Assembly (NCBI GenBank): GCA_028023455.1 | Contig: JAQFVV010000003.1 | Coordinates: 28,706,001 to 28,770,000 of the forward strand | Direction: 5' to 3' | DNA: 64,000 nt | DNA from: Epiperipatus broadwayi | Lineage: Eukaryota > Animalia > Onychophora | Shown here: piece after piece, positions 1-51,096 of the stretch | Position numbering within the stretch: the first letter of the stretch is position 1 | How the letters are laid out: each line of letters starts with the position of its first letter | Position numbers and translations under genes: made by a program | Notes under the pieces: generated by a model | Told to the model about the DNA's origin: nothing | The model's input: only the letters and a program-made list of their open reading frames with translations | Databases searched by the model: none

Positions 1-52
1 GAATGGATTAAGCTTTAGTAAGTATTATTAAGAAATTATATGAAAATAATTA

Positions 53-613
53 AACCATTAAGCATCACATGATCACATTTCCTATACTAGCACATTAATT
101 GTTGATAAACAGAGCAAAACTCTCCATACAGTATTGCCACCTGTGCTAAACAGAGTAATCAATGGATGCCAGAAGGCTTGTGCATAAAATCCCTATCTAA
201 TGCCTAATGGTTTAACACCAATCCTGCCTAATAGGATAATGGTGGCTATGGTTGTAAAAGAGCCAAAGACACCAAAATGTATGGGTGCTGAACTGAGTTC
301 AGACCCATATGACTATTTAAGCTATTGAGCTTAGATTGAAAATATTTTTTGTGTTTTCAATTTCATTCTCATAGTTTAGTAGTTAAGTAGAGATAAAAGG
401 TGGTTGCTAGAGGGTTGCATTAGATCCTAAGATCTAGATGCAGTGCTCTCAGATCCAAAGCTCCTCACTGATGAAGGCCACAAGCCAGAAACTAGTCTGG
501 GGATATTGGATGAGTAGGCATTAGATAGGGATTTTATGCACAAGCCTTCTGGCATCCATTGATTACTCTGTTTAGCACAGGTGGCAATACTGTATGGAGA
601 GTTTTGCTCTGTT
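53..613. mobile_element. Hammerhead-ribozyme repeat family 1 insertion: inverted segment 53-206 (-) plus about 410 nt segment 207-613 (+)
   Basis: Flanked by an exact 14-bp direct repeat TATGAAAATAATTA (39-52 and 614-627) that is LINE ORF2 sequence. Nt 107-206 are the reverse complement of about 515-614. Confidence 0.88.
452..511 (+). ncRNA. Type I hammerhead ribozyme motif, family 1, intact core; predicted cleavage after GUC at 497
   Basis: ATCCAA-AGC-TCCTCA / CTGATGA (468-474) / A-GGC-CACAA-GCC-A / GAAAC-TA-GTC / TGGGGA-TA-TTGGAT. Stem I has an internal loop, and helix III is the palindrome ACTAGT. Confidence 0.85.
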
Positions 614-3600
614 TATGAAAATAATTATTATACTTACCCAATTAGGGGATATAGAATCAGTTAAAGTTAAAAATGGGGTGGGATTAAGGCAAGGATGCCC
701 TATGTCACCTATTTTGTTTTTGTTGTTTTTGAGTGAAATGGAGAAAGCAATAGAAAGACTAGAAAGAGGGATAGAGATACTGTTAATAGGTGGCAAGGGA
801 GTATATACTTTGTCGGGTCTGTTTTTTGCGGATGATATATTTTTGTGTGCAGAAAAAGGAGAAGATATGGAAATTATGTTGAGAGCATGTGCAAGAGTGG
901 GTAAAGAGATGGGGATTAAATTTAGTGAAGAAAAATCAAATATAATGATGGTTAATACTGGGGAAAGAGAAGATGTAGAATTTTTTACTGGGGGATATAA
1001 AGTTATGTGTGGTGGATAGATATAGGTATTTGGGAATCATCTTATGTAATCAGGAAAATTGCTTGGATGAATGGGAGAAAAAAATGGTAAATGAAGCAAA
1101 GAAAAGAAAGGGTCTGGTAAAGAAACTAACAGTATTTTCATATAATAAATATGATGTAGCTAGAATTGTATGGAAGGGAGTTGCAGTACCACGGTTAACA
1201 TATGGTAATGATGCATTATGTGTTTGTAAAAGCGTTTTAGCTTATTTAGAGAAAGTACAAAGGGAAGTAGGAAGATATGTATTAAATGCAGAGATGTGGA
1301 CAGCAAAGGAGGCAATTCAAGGAGAAATGGGATGGTCAAGTTTTTATATGAGAGATGCAAAAAGTAAAATGAAAATCTTTGGTAGGTTGCAGTTTATGGA
1401 TAGTAAAAGAATAGCCAAAATAGTGTTTAATTGGGTTATGAGTAAAGGGCAAGTAACAAGATGGGCAAGAAAGGTAATGTGGTATGCAAAACATTTGGAT
1501 AATGAATTTATATCAGTATACTTGTATAGAAGATGGGATGATTGTGTTAGAAGGATTGTTGAGTGTCATAGTGGTAAAGAATGGGATAAAAGAATGGAAG
1601 CATTAATAAAAAAATAGGGAGTTGGAGAGATGGAGAACTAGTATGGAGGGTAAGAAGAGTTTAAATATATGTAGAAGTAAACGGAATATTGGATGTGAGT
1701 CAATATTATGATAATAGTAAAGAAAGTAGTTTATTGTTTAAGGCTTGAATGGGATCTTTAGCAACAAGAGAATATACATGTAAATGGAAAACTATGGGTG
1801 ATTTAGGGTGCATATTGTGTAAGGAAGGTATAGAAAATATTAGGCATCTGTTGATTGAATGTAAATGCTTGAAAGCAGAAAGGGTACAGATAATGAAGTT
1901 ATGGGAGAATAGGTAGGAACAAAGTGACTACACAGAAAGTGAATTATTAGTTTTTATGCTGGATTTGCGAAAAGATAAGGGGGATTTATATATAAAGGCT
2001 ATAGAGTTGACAAAGATTATGTTGTGGAAATGGGATGGAGCAGAATATGGGAAGACTTAGAGTGGGGAATGGAAAATAAAGTGGCTAACCAGTTTATCTG
2101 GGCATAATTGCTGAGATATTCTTGACTTCGTTTAAGGAGAAGCCAAATACATCACATCACATCACAACAAAAACTTTCTCTTCTTTTGGCGTGGTTGCTC
2201 ACAAATAAAAAAAAATAAATGAATGAAGTCGACTTTTTAAATCCAAAAAACAATATTTAAAAAAGTAGCTATTCATCCTGTTGGGAAAGTCTTTTAACAA
2301 TACAGTCCTATCTGTAGCACAATATGACAGCTATTTAATGTGATATCAGATGGAAAAAAGTTTCAAAAATAATCTCTGGGTTTTTCCCGTTCACTTGGAT
2401 ATGGGTTTTAACTGCATCAGTGTCGATGATATAAATCTATACATATTTTTACTGAAAATACACATTTTTATATTCAATTCAAAATATTATTTTATGTTAC
2501 TTCAGATATAGTCTTTTATAAAGTTATTCTTTTTGTCATGATAATATTTTTTAATTATCCATTTGTTTCTTTTTCTGATGAATAATTTAAAGAAAAAAAA
2601 CTAGTTTTATATTATACTAATAATTTATGATATTAAATAATTTACTGTAGTTTTCAATTACAACTTGTCATAAAAAATATATCCGTAATAATATCGGTTT
2701 TTCTTTTTAATCATGTTTCAAGGGAAATTTGTAATAATAAACTTTTTTTAGAAAGACAATATTTAAAAAAAAATATTCACTGCAACTTTTTTCTAAGAAA
2801 AGACATAAGTAGTTACTAATGTAAGCATCAATGGTATCTTTTTATTCTAGGTTCAATATTAAATTCATTTTTTAACTTTTCAAAAATATTAAAATTTAAG
2901 TTTTTTCCATATAACTTTTTGTTCTCCAAATAAAGTTATCTATCTTTAAAATATAATGCATAAAAATGCTAGTTTTTAGAAAAATATTTCTACTCAACAT
3001 TCCTGCCAATGTTCAAAGTACTAAAAATAAATAATGATATAAATTTTTCCATAATATATTTAAAATTATACTTTCCTTTATTAGCTGTACTTTCTTCATT
3101 AATTCTTTTGAATACATTATCCTTGGTATTAAATCCATATTTTACCGTGAAGTTGGCTTAAGCTTCAATAAAATGACCAATAGAGAATTTTTTTTATATT
3201 AAGGGCTGCATTATTACTTTAACTTAATAAATTATTAATCCTTCAAAACTTTTCTTTAAAAATAATGATAATAATATTGATAATAAGTTAACAACTTATT
3301 AAGCATGCAATAAAAATGAGAACATCTACTTTTATATCAAATTAAACTGACAATTTGATTGGTTATTTACTCTTCAACTTATGATCTAATTTACATATTT
3401 GCCAAGTTTATGTAATTCAAATTTGGAAATAAAATCTATGACTTATATTAAATATCAAATATTATTAGAAAATTTAATTCTAAATTAATTCTACAATTTT
3501 ATTTAAACAAACTAAACACTCTAAATAACATTTTAAAAATAATACTTTATTAATTTATCCAATATTTAATTTTAATTTATCTATTTTTAAAATTTAACTT

Positions 3601-11689: not shown

Positions 11690-11960
11690 AAGAAATAGTA
11701 ATTACGCGCCATTTATGGTACTTACGCCATAAATCTATAAACTCATATAATACAGGAATACGTACATATAAACACTTATCTATTCATGCAAAAATGGAAA
11801 TATTGTTACATAAATGTATAAAATATATTTTATTTCAAATAGAAACAGATATCTTAAATATAATTATTATCTAAGGGAGACTTAAAAATAAATAAATCTA
11901 AAAAAAAAAAAGTATTAACAAGCGAGAACGCGATCGTGACGTACAAAATGTTTGTTAAAT
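11690..11960 (+). promoter_or_regulatory. Probable promoter / 5' UTR region of TMEM115
   Basis: Local CpG enrichment in a CpG-poor background (acgcgccat, acgccat, gaacgcgatcgtgacgt), a TGACGT half-site, and a YY1-like AANATGGCGGC over the start codon. The TSS cannot be determined. Confidence 0.4.
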
Positions 11961-12664
11961 ATGGCGGCTTCCATATTACAAAGAAATATTCCTTATATTA
12001 AACAGCAAATCACAGCTGCTTTTGGTAATAGTAGTGTCGTATTAAAGTTTTTTTGTATAACAATATTTTCTTGTTACTTTTTATCGTTTGCACCAAGTGC
12101 TGTTGATGTTATTAGTGTTACACCCGGTTATGTTCTACCTCCTAGTTTTTGGATTTGGACCATTTTTACTTACTGCTTCCTGGAGATACACATTTGGGTT
12201 GTGTTTGTAGATATTGTTGTAGTTGTTTTATGTGGAAAATTAATAGAACCGTTATGGGGAGCAATGGAAATGTTAACATTTTTTGCGGTGGTTAATATAG
12301 GAGTTGCGATATTGTCGACGATATTTTATTTAATTGTTTATATGATTGCTATGGATATTGAATATTTATTCCAAGTTCATATTCATGGGTTGACTGGATA
12401 TGTTGCTGGAGTTTGTGTAGCAGTAAAACAAATAATGCCTGATCATGTTTTATTAGTTTTACCTATCGGGAAATTGCGGAATCGACACATTCCGCTTTTG
12501 TTAATGTTTATAGCCATTTTATTTGGATTGATTGGATTAATAGATGATGTTTATCCATGCATGTTTACAGCTGGAATGTTTTGTAGCTGGATTTACCTGC
12601 GATTTTATCAGAGACATTCCAATGGATCCAAAGGCGATTTAGCAGATAATTTTACATTTGCCAG
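11961..12664 (+). CDS. TMEM115: Transmembrane protein 115 (rhomboid-like Golgi protein), first coding exon
   Basis: ATG at 11961 gives MAASILQRNIPYIKQQ...VTPGYVLPP.FWIWT...GKLIEPLWGA.EML.FF...KQIMPD...W.YLRFYQRHSNGSKGDLADNFTFA, recognisable as TMEM115. Similarity stops at GCCAG|GT (12664/12665), a likely phase-2 donor. The C-terminal exon(s) were not found. Confidence 0.92.
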
Positions 12665-12937
12665 GTCATTATTTATTTTAATGATATGTAATTAATATAA
12701 TTATTATTTACGTAATTATTTATTTATCTCTTTATGTTATGTACATATATATGTACGTTTACATATAAATATATGAGAGTGTATATATGTATGTAATTAA
12801 TATAATTAATTTTGTATTTAACTATCTGTTTTTATGCTTTGTACATATATATATATATATGTTTACATTTAGAGTATTTGAATACAAGTATATTGTCTAT
12901 ATTGAACTTAATATAATTAGAAGAAATTTGAACTCAG

Positions 12938-13886: not shown

Positions 13887-13945
13887 ATCCAAGGCTCCTC
13901 ACTGACGAAGGCCATAAGCCAGAAACTAGTTTGAGGATATTGGAT
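13887..13945 (+). ncRNA. Type I hammerhead motif, family 1, intact; predicted cleavage after GUU at 13931
   Basis: ATCCAA-GGC-TCCTCA / CTGACGA / A-GGC-CATAA-GCC-A / GAAAC-TA-GTT / TGAGGA-TA-TTGGAT, with a fully Watson-Crick proximal stem I. Confidence 0.85.
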
Positions 13946-13970
13946 GAGTAGGCAGGTGCAGTGCTCTCAG

Positions 13971-14029
13971 ATCCAAGGCTCCTCACTGACGAAGGCCATA
14001 AGCCAGAAACTAGTTTGGGGATATTGGAT
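13971..14029 (+). ncRNA. Type I hammerhead motif, family 1, intact; predicted cleavage after 14015
   Basis: Same fold exactly 84 nt downstream of the previous motif (CTGACGA at 13902 and 13986), with stem I TCCTCA/TGGGGA. Confidence 0.85.
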
Positions 14030-15344
14030 GAGTAGGCACTAGATAGGGATTTTATGCACAAGCCTTCTGGCATTCTTTGATTACTCTGTCTTGCTTAGAG
14101 TGGCACTACTGTATGGAGAGAGTTTTGCCCATTTTAACAACAATTATGAGCAAGCATGGAAGATAGTGATCATGTGATGTTTTACAGTTTAAAATCTAGG
14201 TGCAGTGTTCTCAGATTCAAGGCTCCTCACTGATGAAAGCCACAAGCTAGAAACTAGTTAAGGGATATTGGATGAGTAGGCACTAGATAGGGCTTTTATG
14301 CACACACGTTCCTGCATCCATTGATTACTTTGGCTTGGACTGAGTGACGCTAGCATGTGTATGTATCTGAATGGGGATCATGTGATATTTAGTGACCATG
14401 TACATGTGAAAAAGACAAAGCTCCCATATATGTATTTCATGCTGAACCAAGCACTCATCAATTGATCCAAATCATCATCTCCCACACACATAATATAGTC
14501 AATGCTCAGTTTATGTTAAGATAGCAAATCTTAAAACTTTAATGGACAGGTTTCAATCTTCACCCTTCCATGATGAAGAGATTGAAGCCTGTCCATTAAA
14601 GTTTGAAGATTTGCTATTTTAATATAAACTGAGCATTGATTATATATGTGTAGGAGATGATGATCTGGACCAATTGATGAATGTTGATTCAGCATGAAAT
14701 TCGTATATTGCAGATAATTGTATGTAGTCACATGTATCAGTTGTAGAAGATGGAGTGAATAGCTATAGAAACTTGAAAGTCTGAGTGTATATATATATAT
14801 ATTTATACACATTGCTTGTTATATATATTCACACACCCACATACTACATACTGAGAATATAAGTTAAAATATATATTACAATATATATACAATATTTTTT
14901 TTCTTTCCTATTCAAATTTGCAATTTATTTAGTATTATTAATAGTTTTGTAAACAGTATATATTGTTTAGATTTTTTAGCTACTTTTTGTTATAATAAGT
15001 GTGAAATACTGTTTGCAAAGCTGTAATAAAGTTTAATCCTAAATATGCAAGACACTATTAAAACAAAATGATTACATTTATGAATGTGTACAATATACAT
15101 ATTTGGATGTATGTGTACATAAAGCCATCCACTAAAAAAGCTTATTTTATGACAAAAGAGCATTAGTCATGCATCTAAAATGCACTGTCATTCTTAATGA
15201 AATTTTCATACATATGTGCTAACAATAAAATAAATGCATAATTCTGTATAATAATTAGAGAAAATTATCCAGCAATGATATTACCAAGCAACTAACAATG
15301 AAGTGCTTTCCTGAAGGTTTGTGATGATGGTGTTTTACTTGTGT

Positions 15345-16099: not shown

Positions 16100-19000
16100 A
16101 CATAGTGGTGTATTTAATAGGCCATCAGAGTGGATGAGAAAGTATATCTAGGTTTCCTAAATTTCTAGACTCATAACCAACTGGTGATAGGAGACCAGAA
16201 AAGTGGCAGGAATTAAACAAAGCAATTGAAAATGAGGAGCTTGAGGTATTATCAGTAGTGGAAACACATCTAAGAGAAAAAGAAGAACCTGTTTTGGAAG
16301 ATTTGGTATGGCAGGGTATAAATAGAAAAGAGAAAGAAAAAAAGGATGGTGGTATAGGTGTTATATCAAAAAAATATTTAAATACTGTTAAATGCCAAGA
16401 ACGTTTGTGGTTTGACATCAGGTTGGGAAAACAAGAATGGATGGTGGCTATAGTTTGTATAGCTGCTGGAAATAGTCAAACTATAATGGAGTGGAACAAT
16501 AGCATATATGAGTGCCTAGTTAAGGATATACAGAGTTTTAAAGAAAAGGGGAAGAGAATAATGTTTATAGGAAATATGAATGGGCATATTGAAGAAATTG
16601 ATGATGTAAACAATAAGAATGGACAGCTTTTGAAGAAATTTTGTCAGAGAGTAAATTTGAGCATTGGAAACTTATCTAATATTTATGAGGGACAATATAC
16701 ATGGTTTAGGAATAATATATCCCATACAATAGATTATATATTGGTAGAGAAAGAGGGAATGAATAAAATACGGAAAATTAAGATGTTTGATAATGAAGAG
16801 AGAGTATGTAATAGTGGTCATAATTTTGTTGTAATTGAAATGGTTAGTAATGTGATGGAAAATAGAAATAAAAGTAGAAACAATAGTGAAAGATGTGCAT
16901 GGAGAGTGAATGATAAGAATAAGTTAGAAGAGTATAAAATACAAGTTGAAGAAACCATGGAAGAGTTGATTGGAAATGAGTATGAGGACTGGTGTGATGA
17001 AATAGAAAAAGTCGCAAATAGGGTTTTAGGTGAGAATATTCAGAAGAATAAAAGTAATAGAAAAATGAGAGTTAGTAAAAGTGTAAAAGATATGAAAAAA
17101 ACATGCAGAGAATATAAGTGTGCTATTAAGAACAAAGAAAGTGAAAAAGATAATGCTAAATGGGAAAAGTACTTAGAAAAGAAGAAGTTAGCCAAAATAG
17201 ATAATTATATAGAGAGAATGAAACTAAATAGTAAATTATTGGATGATATTAATAAAAGTGGAAGAGATGGGAGTAAAAAATTTTGGAATTACATTAAAAG
17301 GATAAATTTAGCGGAGAGAGAGAGAGAGTATTACTGGATGAGGAGGGAATAGAGTGTAGCTCTAGAGAAGAATTAGAGAGAATATTGAATAGTTATGTAA
17401 TGGATATAGAAAAGATGTTAGATGTGAAGGACAGAGGGATAGAAAATATGAAAGCATATAGTAATGGGAATATTACATTTACAGAAAATGAACTGAATGA
17501 AGCCGGGAAGGAATTGAGAAGTGGTAAGGCAAGAGGATTAGATGGATGGGTAGCAGAAATGGTAATGAATTTGGGGCATAGGGCAAAAGTAAAGTTACCA
17601 TTATGTTTTAATAAGATGACACAGAAGAGAGTTTTTCTGGGTAGTTGGACTAATACAAGAATAAGATTATTATTTAAAGGAAAGGGTAAGGATTGTAGAA
17701 AGTTAAATAATTATAGACCGATAGCGGTAACATCAGTTTTATATAAAGTTTTTTCATATATGGTGGGAGTTGCAAAATGGATGGAAGAAAATAATGTAGT
17801 GGGGGAAATGCAAGGAGGTTTTAGGTCAGATGGGCATATAGGAGATAGTCTATTTATAGTTACACAACTTATAGATATGAGTAGAAATTCAGGTAGACTG
17901 TTATATATGAGTTTTATAGATATAGACAAGGCATATGATAGAGTGAATAGAAATAGATTATGGATAAGTTTAGCAAATCTGGAAATGGATGAAACTTTAG
18001 TGGGTGTTATTAAGAAATTATATGAAAATAATTACTATATATATCAATTAGGGGATATAGAATCAGTTAAAGTTAAAAATGGGATGGGACTGAGGCAAGG
18101 ATGCTCTATGTCATCTATTTTGTTTGTGTTGTATTTGAGTGAAATGGAAAGAGCAATAGAAAGTCTAGGAGGAGGGATAGAGATACCGTTAATAGGTGGC
18201 AAGAGAGTATATACATTGTCGAGTCTTTTTTTTGCGGATGATGTCTTTTTGTGTGCAGAAAGAAGAGAAGATATGGAAGTTATGCTGAGGACATGCGCAA
18301 GGGTAGGTAAAGATATGGGGATTAAATTTAGTGAAGAAAAATCAAATACAATGATGGTGAATACTGGGGAAAGAGAAGACGGAGATTTCTTATTGGGGGA
18401 TATAAAGTTAAGTGTGGTGAATAGATATAGTTATTTGGGAATCATCTTGAGTAATAAGAAAAATCGCTAGGATGAATGGGAGAAAAAATTGATAAATGAA
18501 GCAAAGAAAAGAAAGGGATTGATAGAGAAATTAACAGTGTTTTCATATAATAAATATGATTAGCTAGAATTGTATGGGAGTGGCAATAGAGGGTTAACAT
18601 ACGGCAATGATGCATTATGTGTTAGTAAAGGGGTATTAGATTGCTTAGAAAAAGTACAAAGGGAAGTAGGAAGACATGCATTAGATGTTGAGGTGTGGAC
18701 AGCAAAAGAGGCAATTCAAGGAGAAATGGGATGGTCAAGTTTTTATATGAGGGATGCAAAAAGCAAATTGAAAATGTTCGGTAGATTGCAGTTTATGGAT
18801 AATAAAAGAATAGCCAAAATAGTATTTAATTGGGTTACAAGTAAAGGGCAAGCAACACGATGGGTGAGAAAGGTAGTGTGGTATGCAGAAGATTTGGATA
18901 AAGAAGTTATGTCAGTATACTTGTACAAAAGATGGGATGATTGTGTTAGGAGGATTGTTGAGTGTTATAGTGGGAAGAAGTGGGATAGAAGAATAGATGC

Positions 19001-19564
19001 ATTAATAAAGAATAGGGAGTTGGAGAGATGGTTAACTAGTATGGAGAGTAAAACGAGTTTAAATATATATAGAAGTAAACGGAACATTGGGTGTGAGTTA
19101 ATTTATGGTAATAGTAAGCAAAGTAGTTTATTGTTTGAGGCTCGAATGGGATCTTTCGCAACAAGGGAATATACACGTAAATGGAAAAATATGGGTGATT
19201 TAGTCTGCAAGGTGTGTAAGGAAGGCATAGAAAATATTAGGCATCTGTTACTTCAATGTAAATGTTTGGAAGCAGAAAGGGTACAAATAATGAAGTTATG
19301 GAAGGTTAAATATGAACAAAGTGATTATACAGAAAGTGAGTTATTGGTTTTTATGCTAGGTTTGGGAAAAAATAAGGGGGATTTAGATATGAAGGTCATG
19401 GAGTTGACAAAGATTATGTTGTGGAAATGGGATGGAGCAGATTATGGGAAAACTTAGGGTGGACAATGGAAAAGGAAGGTAAAGTGGCTAACTGGTTTCT
19501 CAGGGCATAGCTGCTGAGAGATTGCTGACTCCGTTTAAGGAGAAGTCACAGTACATCACATCAC
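16100..19564 (+). mobile_element. Non-LTR retrotransposon (APE-RT LINE), copy B; near-complete ORF2, 5'-truncated, boundary approximate
   Basis: APE motifs (LGFLN ~16150, VVETHL, IGNMNGH, TIDYIL, SGHN), RT motifs (YRPIAV, QGGFR, FIDIDKAYDRV, GLRQGC, FFADD), a C-terminal CxxC-x8-H-x4-C knuckle (CKVCKEGIENIRHLLLQC) and a CATCACATCAC tail. Confidence 0.95.
16135..19457 (+). pseudogene. Disrupted ORF2 (endonuclease + reverse transcriptase + zinc knuckle) of LINE copy B
   Basis: Three consecutive ORF pieces (16258-17352, 17385-18470, 18570-19457) are separated by stops and frameshifts. Confidence 0.9.
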
Positions 19565-47075: not shown

Positions 47076-47551
47076 AAAATAAAATTTTTATTCATTAATT
47101 TTTTTAATTTCTCTAGTTGTTGCCTTGGGTTAGTAGAAAGTTTGATAATTAAAATATATTTACATAATATTTACATGAAATAATTATCAACAGCAGATCA
47201 CAAAAAATATAACTTTTATTAAATACAATAAATAATAATGTTAAAATAAATTATTTTACATTTCTAAAATGTCTCTAAAATTTTTACTTCATAATAAATA
47301 CATGGCCCAAATGAATTTTAAATAATTTAAAATATATTTATTCAGTAAAATTTTATCTGGATTACCAAAAACTAATATCTCTTAATTTCTCTAGTATGTA
47401 TTTTTCAATATACAGGCCATATTCTACTTTATAACGTGAATATACATAAAGAGAAATGCGGGATTCGAACTCAGACTTTCACACAACACACTACTCTCAG
47501 TGCCATCTCATATTGCTGATCCACCTGATCACACACATGTGAAAAGATAAA

Positions 47552-47608
47552 TAATCACCAATATACGTATTTCATGCTAAACCAGCAATCATCAGTTGGT
47601 CCAGATTA
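47552..47608 (-). ncRNA. Type I hammerhead motif, family 2, intact
   Basis: Reverse complement reads TAATC-TGG-ACCAA / CTGATGA / T-TGCT-GGTTT-AGCA-T / GAAATACGTAT-A / TTGGT-GATTA. Confidence 0.85.
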
Positions 47609-48138
47609 CTATCCTCACACATATATATAATCAGTGCTCAGCTTTATATTAAGATAGCCAATCTTTATACTTTAATGGACAGGCTTTAAACTATTTCAAC
47701 TCACAACTCTTCAGCCTTCCATTTTATTGAAAATCTGATGGTGGAACATTCAAAGCCCTTGTTAGTGCCAAGGTTGTCATCCTACACATGTTGACATATT
47801 AGTCATTCTGACCCCTTATGTACGGGAGAATAATCCATTTATACGTACATTTGTGAGGGATGGGCAGACCTTTTACACACTATTTATATAAATTAATACA
47901 TTCTACAGGCTTAAACCTGCATTTATACATGCAATATATGCGGGATTCGAACTCAGACTTTCACACAACCCACTACTCTCAGTGCTATCTCATATTGCTG
48001 ATCCACCTGATCACACACATGTGAAAAGATAAATAATCACCAATATATGAATTTCATGCTAAACCAGCAATCTAAAGTATAAAGATTGGCTATCTTAATA
48101 TAAAGGTGAGCAGTGATTATATATATGTGTGAGGATAG

Positions 48139-48195
48139 TAATCTGGACCAACTGATGATTGCTGGTTTAGCATGAAATACGTATATTGGTGATTA
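48139..48195 (+). ncRNA. Type I hammerhead motif, family 2, intact; predicted cleavage after AUA at 48185
   Basis: Stem I is TAATC/GATTA plus ACCAA/TTGGT with a TGG bulge. CTGATGA starts at 48152, stem II is TGCT/AGCA, GAAA is at 48174-48177, and helix III is the palindrome ATACGTAT. Confidence 0.87.
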
Positions 48196-48219
48196 TCTTT
48201 TCACATGTGTGTGATCAGG

Positions 48220-48282
48220 TGGCTCAGCAATATGAGATGGCACTGAGAGTAATGGGTTGTGTAAAAGTCTGAGTTCGAATCC
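48220..48282 (+). promoter_or_regulatory. tRNA-like internal Pol III promoter (A box / B box) in the family 2 unit
   Basis: TGGCTCAGC at 48220-48228 (A-box-like) and GTTCGAATCC at 48273-48282 (canonical B box). The B box recurs in all four head copies of the array. Confidence 0.6.
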
Positions 48283-48617
48283 TGCATATATTACATATAT
48301 AAATGCAGGTTTAAGCCTGTAGAATGTATTAATTTATATAAATAGTGTGTAAAAGGTCTGCCCATCCCTCGCACATGTATGTATAAATGGATTATTCTCC
48401 TGTACATGAGGGGTCAGAATGACTAATATGTCAACATGGGTAGGATGACAATCTTGGCACTAACAAGGGCTTTGAACGTTCCACCATCAGATTTTCAATG
48501 AAATGGAAGGCTGAAGAGTTGTGAGTTTGGAATAGTTTGAAGCCTGTCCATTAAAGTATAAAGATTGGCTATCTTAATATAAAGCTGAGCACTGATTATA
48601 TATATGTGTGAGGATAG

Positions 48618-48674
48618 TAATCTGGACCAACTGATGATTGCTGGTTTAGCATGAAATATGTATATTGGTGATTA
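48618..48674 (+). ncRNA. Type I hammerhead motif, family 2; predicted cleavage after 48664
   Basis: Same fold 479 nt downstream, with helix III ATATGTAT (one C>T in the palindrome). Confidence 0.8.
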
Positions 48675-51096
48675 TTTATCTTTTCACATGTGTGTGATCA
48701 GGTGGATCAGCAATATGAGATGGCACTGAGAGTAGTGGATTGTGTGAAAGTCTGAGTTCGAATCCCGCATATATTACATATATAAATGCAGGTTTAAGCC
48801 TGTAGAATGTATTAATTTATAAAGAGAAATGGTAAAAGTTTATCAAATTCATTTTTTCTCTAGCTGAATCCTAGTATTTTAAAATTTACATATTCACATA
48901 TTAAATATGTTTAAATTGACATCTTAAAAGTTTATCAATTTCACAATAAAAGTTGAACAAATTCAGTACTATTTGTCTTGCTATGTGACTCCATATTAAA
49001 TTTTACTTTTAACATTTTGTTAAATAAAATATATTCTTAAACTGAAATCCCAAAAGTTTATCAAATTCATTATTATAATTGATCTAAATTGTCATTATTT
49101 AAATGAGAAATTAAATACATGGTTTACAAACACAATTTAATTAAAAATGTATTTACAAAATCAAATTACTTTTAGTTTAAAAGTTTTTTCAACTGTGTAA
49201 TCTTTTGATTTTTGCTGCCCTCTTTTTGGTTTTTTTTAATGATGGGTTTTTTTATGATGTCATTCAAAATAATTACCCTCTTGTATCGATCTTGGAATTT
49301 GAATAATAAGAGCGAACTAAAGTTAAGCGCAAATTATAATAATCCTATGGATAGGAAAAGTTAATGCTTAATAATAAAAAATAACTTTTGTGATTTCACA
49401 CTTAAATCCAAATAACAAAGATGAAACAAGGTAGGAGAAAAAATATAATTTATTTTGATTGTAAATTATACTAATAGTCAGACCTTGCTGTATTCATAAA
49501 AATATAGACTATGGTTACTTTTCCAGACCATTATATCACCACTAATTCACTGAAGGGAACTTAGATCCTCTCTGGATTAAGAATTTTTTAAACCAGAGTG
49601 TCACACAATATTGGGAAATCCATTGGGAGGATATTTTACACCATCAGCATTATTAAGCATACAAATAATTTGGTAGAATATGAACTCTTATCTCACAAGC
49701 TATTACAAAATTAATTTATTATATTTAAATGGTCAAAATTTATGAGAGGAGAGACAAGAAGCTAGATTAGTAAATAATAAAAATTATTTATTAGACAACA
49801 TTCATTGATTAAATTACCCTACATTATTTTAATAAATGGTACCCAATAAACATCATATGATCACTATTCCTACTACTACTATATGGAGAGTTTTGCCTGT
49901 TTTAATTTTGGTATCCAATAAACTTAATATTATACATTAAAACGTATATGAAATATTAAACTACTATTACATTAGATAATAAAATATAAATAATAAATAC
50001 ATAAATATTACCATCCTTCAGGTGATCACACTTAAAATATCAAAAGTTTTATTAAAGTCAGTTTAAAATTCCTTTTTTGTTAAGCTTAACATTTTTCTTC
50101 ATTTGTTTTTATATTATGGAGTCTATTCTAGTATTTAAGTTGCTATAAATCTATCCTTGAAAATTTAGAAACATTTAAGGTTTCAACTTCTTTAGCAACT
50201 TTATATTTTAAATTATCTAGAGCATATTTTTTCACCTCTTTAATGACACATATTCCATGAGAGGACTTTCATTTAACATTATATGCAAGCATCATTTTTA
50301 AATGTAGATTAAGCACAACTCTGAAATGGCAATTCAAGTTTGATCACATATCAGGCTTTGAACATATAATCCAAACTATCCAGTCACACAGAGGATTTAG
50401 CTGCCATATGTCATCATAATCATTTTATAATATAACTTAGATGTTAAAAAAAATAAAACTTGAAGTTTTTACAAGCGGCTAATGACGAATGTTAAAACCA
50501 AAAGACAGATTCATGCTGGGAAGAGTGCAAGCTTTTAATAAAAAATTAATTACCCTGAGAATTGTTTAAATTATTACTATCTCATTATTTTTTCAAAATT
50601 AATTTTATTATTTACAATAAGAAAAAAAAATTTGTTACAATACAAAAATATTTTTTTATATACTTGACATTTTACTGAAATAAAATTTGGAATTCCTTTT
50701 TTTTTTAAACTAAAAAATCAGATTTTATTTTCAAACTTTGAATAATTGACTTATATTAATTTTAGAGACAAATTAAGCAAATTTCAAATCAGTGAATTAA
50801 AAGAAATTTTTTTTTTTTACTTGTCTACTCTTTTTTTCATCGCAAAAGTAACCAGCATTTAGCCACTCATGTGGGGCAATTATGTATCTTGCTTTGCAAC
50901 TGATACATTATAGATTTTCCATGCATTTTAATATTGCAAATTACAAATGTTTTTAAAAACATTTAAATCAAAAGTTTATATACTAATAAAATTCTATACA
51001 AAAAAAATGAAATGATTCAAGATTCTTCAAAATTAATGCAATATTTGATGAGTTATAAAATCATAAACAAACAAATAAACTTTCATATTTATTTAG

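What the first reader, a model, noticed from the sequence alone, without database searches (positions are those of the whole stretch)
47446..48831. Young 1.36-kb retrozyme-like array: 479-nt ribozyme-to-ribozyme unit on both strands within one TSD
Seen: about 2.8 nearly identical units, a single inversion point at 48072/48073 that falls inside a hammerhead, an exact 13-bp TSD, three complete type I hammerheads with a bulged extended stem I and an 8-nt palindromic helix III, and no ORF. Established: metazoan non-LTR retrozymes are tandem hammerhead repeats whose transcripts self-process into monomers and circular RNAs. Inference: cleavage at 48185 and 48664 would release a 479-nt monomer. Non-integer tandem arms within one TSD fit rolling reverse transcription around a circular RNA followed by second-strand priming. 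The unit is unrelated in sequence to family 1, so two independent systems coexist here. The U.U opposition at the base of stem II is non-canonical.
Basis: partly seen in the sequence, partly recalled or inferred. Interest (0 to 1): 0.92.

Follow-up and report, generated by a model that had tools for sequence, protein, structure and literature searches.

The report
Hammerhead retrozyme insertion with Penelope-style architecture
This 1.36-kb block is one retrotransposition insert of an abundant non-coding repeat that carries a hammerhead-ribozyme motif; its head-to-head inverted, partly tandem layout is the known insertion footprint of Penelope-like retroelements, so it is a good example of a known kind, not a new system.

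Summary
Window 47459-48818 is a single 1,360-bp insert (2.8 units) flanked by an exact 13-bp duplication. At least ten paralogous copies of the host repeat carry the target site once and uninterrupted. The insert has three complete type I hammerhead motifs, a fourth cut at the inversion point, and no ORF.

It is one copy of a family with at least 3,341 first-look matches in this 5.6-Gb genome. In 29 independent copies:
- the 3' end is fixed, about 150 nt downstream of the predicted cleavage site;
- the 5' end varies, and all copies sampled exceed one unit (the query required a full unit);
- 18 carry a head-to-head inverted arm;
- 12 composites have 12-15-bp duplications.

In 16 of the 18, one arm stops about 45 nt short of the other. 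This matches the published insertion architecture of Penelope-like elements. Those elements are very abundant here and show the same head-to-head bias.

Best reading: a metazoan non-LTR retrozyme copied in by Penelope-type reverse transcription primed from both target DNA ends.

Not shown: ribozyme activity (U.U at the base of helix II; no Rfam hammerhead match), RNA expression, a circular template, or the autonomous partner. Other first-stage readers noted the same signature elsewhere in this genome.

The parts
47446..47458 (.). Left copy of the 13-bp target-site duplication (ATAAAGAGAAATG). Its last 3 nt (ATG) are also complementary to unit RNA CAU at the outer end of the inverted arm, giving a 3-nt microhomology.
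   Evidence: paralogous empty sites
47459..48072 (-). Inverted, 5'-truncated arm. Read on the - strand it covers ruler positions 455-483, 1-483 and 1-107. Its outer end is the 'short' end, about 45 nt before the family's canonical 3' end.
47538..47620 (-). Complete type I hammerhead motif with extended stem I (core to cleavage site 47595-47562). Its minimum-energy fold gives the three-way junction.
48044..48072 (-). Truncated hammerhead, with only the 3' 29 nt (part of helix II, GAAA, helix III). The inversion point 48072/48073 cuts it.
48073..48818 (+). Direct arm, a partial tandem covering ruler positions 371-483, 1-483 and 1-~155. It ends at the family's canonical 3' end. The match runs to 48821 through a 3-nt ATA overlap with the duplication.
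48127..48205 (+). Hammerhead motif 1 of the + arm (core to cleavage site 48152-48185). The core is intact, but a 4-nt deletion in the 3' strand of stem I leaves a minimum-energy fold that is not hammerhead-like.
48186..48664 (+). The 479-nt unit between two predicted cleavage sites. GC is 37%. The predicted fold is -148.7 kcal/mol (z = -5.3), with the two ends paired in a long closing helix that continues stem I.
48606..48688 (+). Hammerhead motif 2 of the + arm (core to cleavage site 48631-48664). Helix III reads AUAUGUAU, a CpG-decay variant.
48764..48818 (+). The 3'-terminal module: a hairpin at 48764-48792 followed by about 25 nt up to the fixed 3' end. Only one arm of each composite has this 'tail'. 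The other arm stops at the 5' foot of the hairpin.
48819..48831 (.). Right copy of the 13-bp target-site duplication.

Best explanation
Window 47459-48818 is one retrotransposition insert of a non-autonomous, non-coding repeat family whose unit is about 483 nt. Each unit carries a type I hammerhead motif, so it is a metazoan 'non-LTR retrozyme'.

Shown here:
- The insert is discrete and is bounded by a 13-bp target-site duplication.
- Family copies have a fixed 3' end, variable 5' ends and lengths above one unit.
- Most copies carry a head-to-head inverted second arm whose outer end stops about 45 nt before the canonical 3' end.
- Duplications are 12-15 bp.
- At both outer junctions of this copy, 3 nt of the duplicated target are also complementary to the (+) RNA.

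Inferred mechanism. An endonuclease makes nicks staggered by about 13 bp. Each 3' overhang anneals by a few bases to hammerhead-sense RNA and primes reverse transcription. One end primes at the 3' end site, just past a hairpin. The other primes at the 5' foot of that hairpin. Each cDNA runs for 0.1 to more than 2 units across the uncut or re-ligated ribozyme junction, and the two cDNAs are joined head to head.

This is the insertion architecture published for Penelope-like elements (PLEs). PLEs are very abundant in this genome, so their RT and GIY-YIG endonuclease are the likely mobilisers.

Unresolved: whether the template is a circular monomer (rolling reverse transcription) or an uncleaved multimeric transcript, and whether the hammerhead cleaves.
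For: Discrete insert:
- At least ten paralogous empty sites carry a single target.
- The 13/13 duplication is exact.

Family size and age:
- At least 3,341 first-look candidates, 93-96% identical to this unit.
- Copies differ from the majority ruler by 0.6-4.6%.

Architecture in 29 independent inserts:
- 18 are inverted, and all 18 are head-to-head.
- In 16 of the 18, one arm ends at about position 152 and the other at 58-113 (median 103; 14 of the 18 lie in 93-113).
- 12 composites have duplications of 12-15 bp, median 13.

Penelope-like elements in the same genome:
- At least 10,242 GIY-YIG first-look candidates, with open frames up to 901 aa.
- 20 neighbouring opposite-strand pairs are all head-to-head and none is tail-to-tail.
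- L070 shows an inverted arm plus 2.3 tandem units of 3,135 bp.

Literature:
- PLE inserts are 5'-truncated partial tandems, often with an inverted 5'-truncated copy and a 30-40-bp tail at one end (PMC8557442).
- Animal retrozymes are proposed to depend on or derive from PLEs (PMC7229834; PMC7761336; preprint 10.64898/2026.07.22.740005).

Template homogeneity and structure:
- All repeats in this insert share six diagnostic variants.
- The unit RNA is strongly structured (z = -5.3).
- The full hammerhead core is present in 52 of 71 family modules.
Against: - No autonomous partner was identified. The ends of 23 PLE loci from this genome show no sequence similarity to the unit. The only matches are neighbouring inserts of sister repeats.
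- No Rfam hammerhead model matches, even on a 106-nt slice at E <= 10.
- Position 10.1/11.1 is U.U instead of the G-C that is highly conserved in hammerheads (PMC4209133).
- There is no RNA evidence. All available runs are contigs of uncertain type, and their depth profile resembles the DNA run.
- The 5' ends of arms do not fall at the predicted cleavage site, so there is no footprint of cleaved templates.
- The sample of 29 inserts was selected to contain a full unit, so the length statistics are biased.
Confidence: 0.7

Rival explanations
1. A monomeric circular RNA, made by hammerhead cleavage and ligation, is the template. Rolling reverse transcription gives the non-integer tandem arm, and a second priming event gives the inverted arm.
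For: - Arms read through the cleavage junction and exceed one unit, up to about 2 units in L026.
- All repeats within this insert share six diagnostic variants.
- Internal and terminal repeats show no fixed differences family-wide.
- A family of 5'-truncating copies needs some way to regain length, and a circle provides one.
- The published retrozyme model proposes exactly this (PMC7761336).
Against: - An uncleaved multimeric transcript of a young partial tandem predicts the same sequence pattern.
- The fixed 3' end at about position 152 is not explained by a circle alone.
- No circular or monomer RNA evidence was obtainable.
- Ribozyme activity is unproven (U.U, no Rfam match).
- Second-strand priming on cDNA cannot by itself produce the inverted arm.
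Confidence: 0.4
2. A SINE mobilised by a LINE (not by a PLE), with classical L1-type twin priming producing a 5' inversion.
For: - Fixed 3' end, 5' truncation and 12-15-bp duplications also fit LINE target-primed reverse transcription.
- LINE-type RT ORFs are present in the window.
- The unit contains an 11-mer resembling a Pol III B box.
Against: - In twin priming the inverted piece starts at an arbitrary internal site and does not repeat the content of the direct piece. Here the outer end clusters at 93-113 in 14 of 18 composites, and the arms overlap in content.
- There is no poly(A) or simple-repeat tail.
- ARAGORN and the Rfam tRNA model find nothing.
- The B-box-like word is not conserved in sister families.
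- Partial tandems are not a LINE/SINE trait.
Confidence: 0.1
3. An artefact or a DNA-level rearrangement: an assembly fold-back, snap-back self-priming of a cDNA, or a local inversion or duplication of satellite DNA.
For: - Palindromes with no spacer are a known long-read artefact.
- No listed contig bridges the inversion point.
Against: - The centre is not symmetric. The arms start at 455 and 371, leaving 84 nt unique to the + arm.
- The arms differ at more than 20 positions and have different outer ends.
- The block is bracketed exactly by a duplication of a target that is single in at least ten paralogs.
- The same layout recurs in 18 of 29 independent loci, each with its own 12-15-bp duplication.
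- A short-read contig matches the left junction without mismatch (record 1).
Confidence: 0.03

Closest known systems
Metazoan non-LTR retrozymes (Cervera & de la Pena 2020, PMC7229834; review PMC7761336)
   Same: - Non-coding, AT-rich (37% GC) repeat of a few hundred nt.
- One type I hammerhead per unit, with a weak palindromic helix III.
- Tandem arrangement, and duplications longer than 4 bp.
- Predicted highly self-paired monomer.
- Coexists with PLEs in the genome.
   Different: - The unit (479-483 nt) is above the 150-450 nt range quoted.
- The sampled copies are dispersed 1-2-unit partial tandems, not long arrays.
- 10.1/11.1 is U.U.
- No Rfam hammerhead model matches.
- The papers read here (searched by key terms) do not mention the fixed 3' end 150 nt past the cleavage site or the inverted arm.
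- circRNA and cleavage were not tested here.
Penelope-like element insertion architecture (Evgen'ev & Arkhipova 2005; Arkhipova 2006; Craig et al. 2021, PMC8557442)
   Same: - 5' truncation and a partial tandem (pseudo-LTR).
- An inverted 5'-truncated copy joined head to head.
- An extension ('tail') present at only one end.
- A hammerhead in the repeated terminal part.
- No poly(A).
- PLEs of this same genome show the same layout.
   Different: - No RT/GIY-YIG ORF; the element is 0.48 kb, not 3-4 kb.
- The tail offset is about 45 nt, against the 30-40 bp quoted.
- No sequence similarity to the PLE copies sampled.
PLE-associated and 'minimal' type I hammerheads that act as dimers (Cervera & de la Pena 2014, PMC4209133; Forster et al. 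1988 as cited there)
   Same: - Short helix III (2 bp plus a 4-nt palindromic loop) that can form an 8-bp intermolecular helix between two copies.
- Motifs occur in pairs on opposite strands 100-700 bp apart.
   Different: - Stem I is long (about 20 bp with a 3-nt bulge) and helix II is 4 bp, closer to 'canonical' animal type I motifs.
- A symmetric U.U replaces the G10.1-C11.1 pair with one extra 5' nucleotide that is reported as conserved.
Schistosoma Sm-alpha hammerhead SINE-like repeat (Ferbeyre et al. 1998, cited in PMC4209133; details from my own knowledge)
   Same: A short interspersed or tandem non-coding repeat carrying a type I hammerhead. A Pol III-type promoter was proposed for it.
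   Different: A tRNA or Pol III origin is not supported here. There is no tRNA call, and the B-box-like word is family-specific.
L1 5' inversions by twin priming (Ostertag & Kazazian 2001; from my own knowledge)
   Same: Both target 3' ends prime on RNA, giving an inverted 5' segment inside one duplication, with microhomology at the junctions.
   Different: The priming site of the second arm is not random, and the arms repeat the same unit content.

Membership tests
Hammerhead ribozyme, type I | Invariant core (C3 U4 G5 A6 N7 G8 A9; G12 A13 A14; A15.1-U16.1; H17) flanked by three helices, with helix I open | tested here: met
   A motif scan finds it three times in the insert and nowhere else in the unit. 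The fold of two of the three gives the three-way junction. 52 of 71 family modules keep the core.
Hammerhead ribozyme, type I | Watson-Crick 10.1-11.1 pair (G-C in nearly all natural hammerheads) | tested here: not met
   This family and its closest sisters have U.U. More distant sister repeats show G.U or A-U at the same place, so it is a pairing position that has drifted. PMC4209133 calls G10.1-C11.1 highly conserved.
Hammerhead ribozyme, type I | Match to a curated Rfam hammerhead covariance model | tested here: not met
   No hammerhead family matches at the gathering score on the whole window, at E <= 10 on 2.3 kb, or at E <= 10 on 106 nt. The window's other hammerhead family is also missed at the gathering score, so the test may be insensitive to these short-helix-III forms.
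Hammerhead ribozyme, type I | Site-specific self-cleavage | not testable with these tools
   No raw RNA reads were available. The 5' ends of inserted arms do not mark the cleavage site.
Metazoan non-LTR retrozyme | Non-coding, low-GC tandem repeat of a few hundred nt with one hammerhead per unit | tested here: met
   Unit of 479-483 nt with 37% GC; longest ORF 54 aa; partial tandems of 1.2-2 units.
Metazoan non-LTR retrozyme | Retrotransposed: dispersed copies with target-site duplications longer than 4 bp | tested here: met
   At least 3,341 candidates. Duplications of 12-15 bp in 12 composites. Empty paralogous sites for this copy.
Metazoan non-LTR retrozyme | Expressed as monomer-length linear and circular RNA | not testable with these tools
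   Only contig-level runs of uncertain type were available, and their depth profile parallels the DNA run.
PLE-mobilised (non-autonomous Penelope-like) element | Insertion architecture: 5' truncation, partial tandem, inverted 5'-truncated copy head to head, tail at one end | tested here: met
   18 of 29 inserts are inverted and all are head to head. 16 of 18 have one long and one short outer end, offset by about 45 nt. The description is in PMC8557442.
PLE-mobilised (non-autonomous Penelope-like) element | Autonomous PLEs present and recently active in the same genome | tested here: met
   At least 10,242 GIY-YIG candidates. Open frames of 871-901 aa. Tandem plus inverted PLE copies 98-100% alike in L070.
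PLE-mobilised (non-autonomous Penelope-like) element | Sequence similarity of the 3' end or pseudo-LTR to an autonomous PLE | tested here: inconclusive
   None was found in 23 PLE loci.
tRNA-derived SINE | tRNA-related head with A and B boxes | tested here: not met
   ARAGORN finds none. No Rfam tRNA hit at E <= 10. The B-box-like word sits near the 3' end of the retroposed unit and is absent from sister families.
L1-type twin-priming 5' inversion | Inverted segment primed at an arbitrary internal site, not overlapping the direct segment | tested here: not met
   Outer ends cluster at 93-113 in 14 of 18 composites, and the arms repeat the same unit positions.

The most novel reading that the evidence does not exclude
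Retrozyme inserts in this genome preserve a nucleotide-level footprint of Penelope-type integration. Both 3' overhangs of a cut staggered by about 13 bp prime on hammerhead-sense RNA at two defined sites that flank a 3' hairpin. The palindromic helix III, which pairs two ribozyme copies, may be what brings two template copies (or two turns of a circle) together for this two-ended priming. That would give the long-unexplained PLE/retrozyme hammerheads a role in integration geometry as well as in RNA processing.
Probability: 0.15. Interest if true: 0.7.

Novelty: new member of a known kind. Interest (0 to 1): 0.42.

Why it matters
Reviews of animal retrozymes state that their repeats show no motif that reveals which autonomous element moves them (PMC7761336). 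The link to Penelope-like elements rests on co-occurrence and, in frogs, on similarity to pseudo-LTRs (2026 preprint).

This family adds a different kind of evidence. Its inserts show the full Penelope insertion signature: a fixed 3' end, partial tandems, a head-to-head inverted arm, a one-sided tail and duplications of about 13 bp.

The inserts also show that the reverse-transcribed RNA spanned the ribozyme junction. They place the start of reverse transcription about 150 nt downstream of the cleavage site, next to a hairpin. Both points are concrete and testable constraints on how retrozymes and PLEs integrate.

The U.U at the base of helix II, in a family with thousands of copies, is a natural test of how much ribozyme activity propagation needs.

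For genome annotation, such composites are easily mistaken for assembly fold-backs or satellites.

Tried and rejected
1. Rfam. No hammerhead hit at any threshold or slice size. The MIR5048 'hit' is only the long hairpin formed by the palindrome.

2. RNA evidence. The single run search returned only contig-level runs, none on record as RNA. Laying four of them showed family-wide depth with the same profile in the DNA run and the 'RNA?' runs, and no starts or ends. Nothing can be said about expression, cleavage or circles.

3. The 47403->48820 joint. I first took it for a possible empty allele. It is explained by paralogous copies of the host repeat.

4. Cleaved-template footprint. BLAST put five arm 5' ends at unit position 1. 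Inspection showed they start 2-16 nt upstream, inside the ribozyme. Arm 5' ends are enriched in the hammerhead region (12 of 49 against 5.4 expected, P = 0.006). I read that as reverse transcriptase stalling at structure, not as cleavage.

5. Fixed differences between internal and terminal repeats, which would have argued for a linear master copy. None were found.

6. Partner search. Blastn of the unit against 23 PLE loci found only adjacent inserts of sister repeats. Two motif scans (one with the canonical core, one allowing Watson-Crick 3-8 covariation) and Rfam found no hammerhead in those PLE copies. By eye, L070 carries a variant-core hammerhead-like motif at its 3' end.

7. tRNA or Pol III origin. 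Rejected.

8. Duplication around the L070 PLE composite. None of 9 bp or more was found, so the staggers could not be compared.

9. Core conservation. Substitutions in the ribozyme core are half as frequent as in the rest of the module (30 against 55 expected). Shared ancestry and CpG or indel hot spots confound this, so I treat it as suggestive only.

Method note. A majority-rule ruler of 20 copies of this non-coding repeat was used only to number positions. It is not reproduced here.
Full report
WHAT IS THERE

The window is part of a 5.6-Gb, AT-rich genome (about 27% GC locally).

Between 47446 and 48831 the sequence is built from one repeat unit on both strands. Unit position 1 is set at 48186.
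- The + arm 48073-48821 reads unit positions 367-479, 1-479 and 1-153.
- The - arm, read from 48072 down to 47456, reads 451-479, 1-479 and 1-~106.
- There is one inversion point, at 48072/48073. The centre is not symmetric: 84 nt (48073-48156) are unique to the + arm.

The 13-mer ATAAAGAGAAATG is exact at 47446-47458 and 48819-48831.

Both flanks belong to an older dispersed repeat (at least 775 and 512 first-look candidates, 75-84% identity). In at least ten paralogous copies the left and right flanks are contiguous, with one copy of a TTAAAGGGAAATG-like target. The 1,360 bp from 47459 to 48818 (2.8 units, 36% GC) are therefore a single insert with a true target-site duplication.

No ORF exceeds 54 aa.

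THE HAMMERHEAD MOTIF

A scan for the invariant core plus three helices finds the motif three times in the insert. Core to cleavage site lies at 48152-48185 (+), 48631-48664 (+) and 47595-47562 (-). A fourth copy is cut by the inversion point (48044-48072). The topology is type I.

The parts of the motif are:
- Stem I: 5 bp, then a 3-nt bulge, then about 12-15 further pairs. It merges into the long helix that closes the predicted fold of the whole unit (-148.7 kcal/mol, z = -5.3, 0 of 100 shuffles as stable).
- Helix II: 4 bp with a 5-nt loop, preceded by a U.U opposition at 10.1/11.1.
- Helix III: 2 bp closed by a 4-nt loop. Together these form the 8-nt palindrome AUACGUAU. Across the family, the CpG in it has decayed to TG or CA in about half of the copies, including the motif at 48631-48664.

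This weak, palindromic helix III is the usual animal type I design that is thought to act through dimers in tandem copies (PMC4209133).

Points against calling it a proven ribozyme:
- No Rfam hammerhead model matches at any threshold, even on a 106-nt slice.
- G10.1-C11.1, described as highly conserved, is replaced by U.U.
- The copy at 48152-48185 has lost 4 nt of the 3' strand of stem I, and its minimum-energy fold is not hammerhead-like.

Points for it:
- The full core in this arrangement is very unlikely by chance.
- 52 of 71 family modules keep the core.
- Closer sister repeats (68-86% identical overall) keep the core and helix II letter for letter, and their changes in stem I are wobble-compatible.
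- More distant sisters show G.U or A-U where this family has U.U, so the position behaves as a pair.

Cleavage itself could not be tested.

THE FAMILY

The unit has at least 3,341 first-look matches in the genome. The 40 that were scored are 93-96% identical to this unit. Twenty full copies differ by 0.6-4.6% (mean 2.6%) from a majority-rule ruler of 483 nt.

In 29 independent inserts:
(a) One end is fixed, at ruler position about 148-165, ending in ...CAATGTATTAAT, with no poly(A).
(b) The other end varies, which is the pattern of 5' truncation.
(c) All sampled copies exceed one unit, up to about 2 units. The sample was chosen to contain a full unit, so this is biased.
(d) 18 of the 29 have a second, inverted arm, and it is always joined head to head.
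(e) In 16 of those 18, one arm ends at the canonical 3' end and the other ends earlier, at 58-113 (median 103; 14 of the 18 lie in 93-113). That position is the 5' foot of a hairpin about 20 nt upstream of the canonical end. A 'tail' of about 45 nt is therefore present at only one end.
(f) 12 composites have clear duplications of 12-15 bp (median 13).

The window's copy is a typical member: short end at 107, long end at about 155, duplication of 13 bp.

At both of its outer junctions, 3 nt of the duplication also match the element (ATA on the right; ATG, the complement of CAU, on the left). That is what annealing of each target 3' overhang to (+) RNA before extension would leave.

WHAT IT RESEMBLES

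Craig et al. (PMC8557442) describe Penelope-like element (PLE) inserts this way:
- They are highly 5'-truncated.
- They are often organised into partial tandems, the pseudo-LTRs.
- They often carry an inverted 5'-truncated copy at the 5' end.
- They often carry a 30-40-bp extension at only one end.
- Hammerheads typically lie in the pseudo-LTRs.

The family meets each of these points.

PLEs are very abundant in this genome. There are at least 10,242 first-look GIY-YIG candidates, all 150 scored are above the Pfam cut-off, and open frames reach 901 aa. Among the scored hits, I counted 20 neighbouring opposite-strand pairs that are head to head and none tail to tail. Five neighbouring same-strand (tandem) pairs are spaced about 3.1 kb apart.

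Locus L070 shows a 1.08-kb inverted arm joined to 2.3 tandem units of 3,135 bp, with two intact ORFs of 875-877 aa.

The literature already proposes PLEs as the mobilisers, or the source, of animal retrozymes. The grounds are co-occurrence and, in Xenopus, similarity to pseudo-LTRs. A term search of the three retrozyme papers read here found no mention of an inverted arm; none was checked specifically for the fixed 3' end or the tail.

TEMPLATE FORM

All repeats in this insert share six variants relative to the ruler (positions 22, 43, 78, 142, 379 and 443). They differ by about 29 private changes in 1,360 nt (2.1%), mostly G>A and C>T. Family-wide, internal and terminal repeats have the same majority sequence. 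Arms read through the cleavage junction.

This fits either rolling reverse transcription on a ligated monomer circle or copying of an uncleaved multimeric transcript. I could not separate the two.

An argument for a length-restoring step such as a circle: a lineage whose copies are 5'-truncated at every generation would otherwise shrink below one unit. This is inference only.

The 5' ends of arms do not fall at the cleavage site. They are enriched inside the ribozyme region (12 of 49 against 5.4 expected, P = 0.006). I read that as reverse transcriptase stalling at structure.

RIVALS

- Classical LINE twin priming does not predict the clustered second priming site or the repeated content of the arms.
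- Snap-back priming and assembly fold-back both predict a symmetric centre. A fold-back would also not be bracketed by a duplication whose target is single in the paralogs.
- A tRNA-derived SINE origin is not supported.

WHAT COULD NOT BE DONE

- No run on record as RNA holds the stretch, and only contigs were available.
- The autonomous partner was not found in 23 PLE loci.

EARLIER NOTES OF THIS SCAN

First-stage readers recorded the same 'inversion plus about 13-bp duplication' signature for several other hammerhead repeat families in this genome, alongside Penelope remnants. These notes are unchecked. My family-level counts agree with them for this family.

VERDICT

It is a well-preserved example of a known kind: a metazoan non-LTR retrozyme inserted with Penelope-type architecture. 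It is moderately interesting for the mechanistic constraints it gives. It is not a new system.

Noticed in passing
window 14427-14707: A second head-to-head pair: the hammerhead-containing module of a sister repeat (82-84% identical to ruler positions 349-483) lies on the - strand at 14427-14559 and on the + strand at 14575-14707. It shows the same inverted layout in a diverged family.
   Followed up: partly
window 39-627 and 13887-14029: An unrelated hammerhead family. Its core is CUGAUGA or CUGACGA, it has an A.A opposition at the base of a 3-bp helix II, and helix III is the palindrome ACUAGU. The copy at 39-627 also has inverted arms around the ribozyme. A mismatch at 10.1/11.1 is therefore not peculiar to one family in this genome.
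   Followed up: partly
L070:9420-9490 (G000:C12394, about 20950420-20950490): The 3' end of an intact PLE carries a hammerhead-like motif with a variant core (UUGAAAA, i.e. U3 and A8), a 6-bp helix II, GAAA and a short palindromic ACGU. The element ends 12 nt after the predicted cut. Rfam does not match it.
   Followed up: partly
L030:19-1356 (G000:C34): One long - arm reads ruler positions 98-483, 1-483, then jumps from 483 to 157 and continues 157-483, 1-155. This is an exactly unit-length permuted monomer, starting just after the canonical 3' end and appended to a unit that ends at the ribozyme cleavage site. It could be a template switch or two nested events.
   Followed up: no
window 48264-48275 and 48747-48758 (+), 47469-47480 (-): The word GAGTTCGAATCC matches the Pol III B-box / tRNA T-loop consensus at 10 of 11 positions. 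No tRNA is called, and sister repeats read GTGCTCATATACC at this place. It is probably a coincidence or a family-specific acquisition.
   Followed up: yes
window 47200-47445 and 48832-49080: The insert sits in an older dispersed AT-rich repeat (hundreds of copies, 75-84% identity) that contains an internal duplication of about 126 nt (48898-49100).
   Followed up: partly
window 47459-48818: A read-through transcript of the whole composite would fold into a hairpin of about 600 bp with 95% pairing. That is a possible source of small RNAs against the family. This was not tested.
   Followed up: no
window 16258-19457 and 594-1617: LINE-type reverse-transcriptase ORF fragments (RVT_1, zf-RVT). A DUF1751/TMEM115-like ORF lies at 11952-12695.
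   Followed up: no
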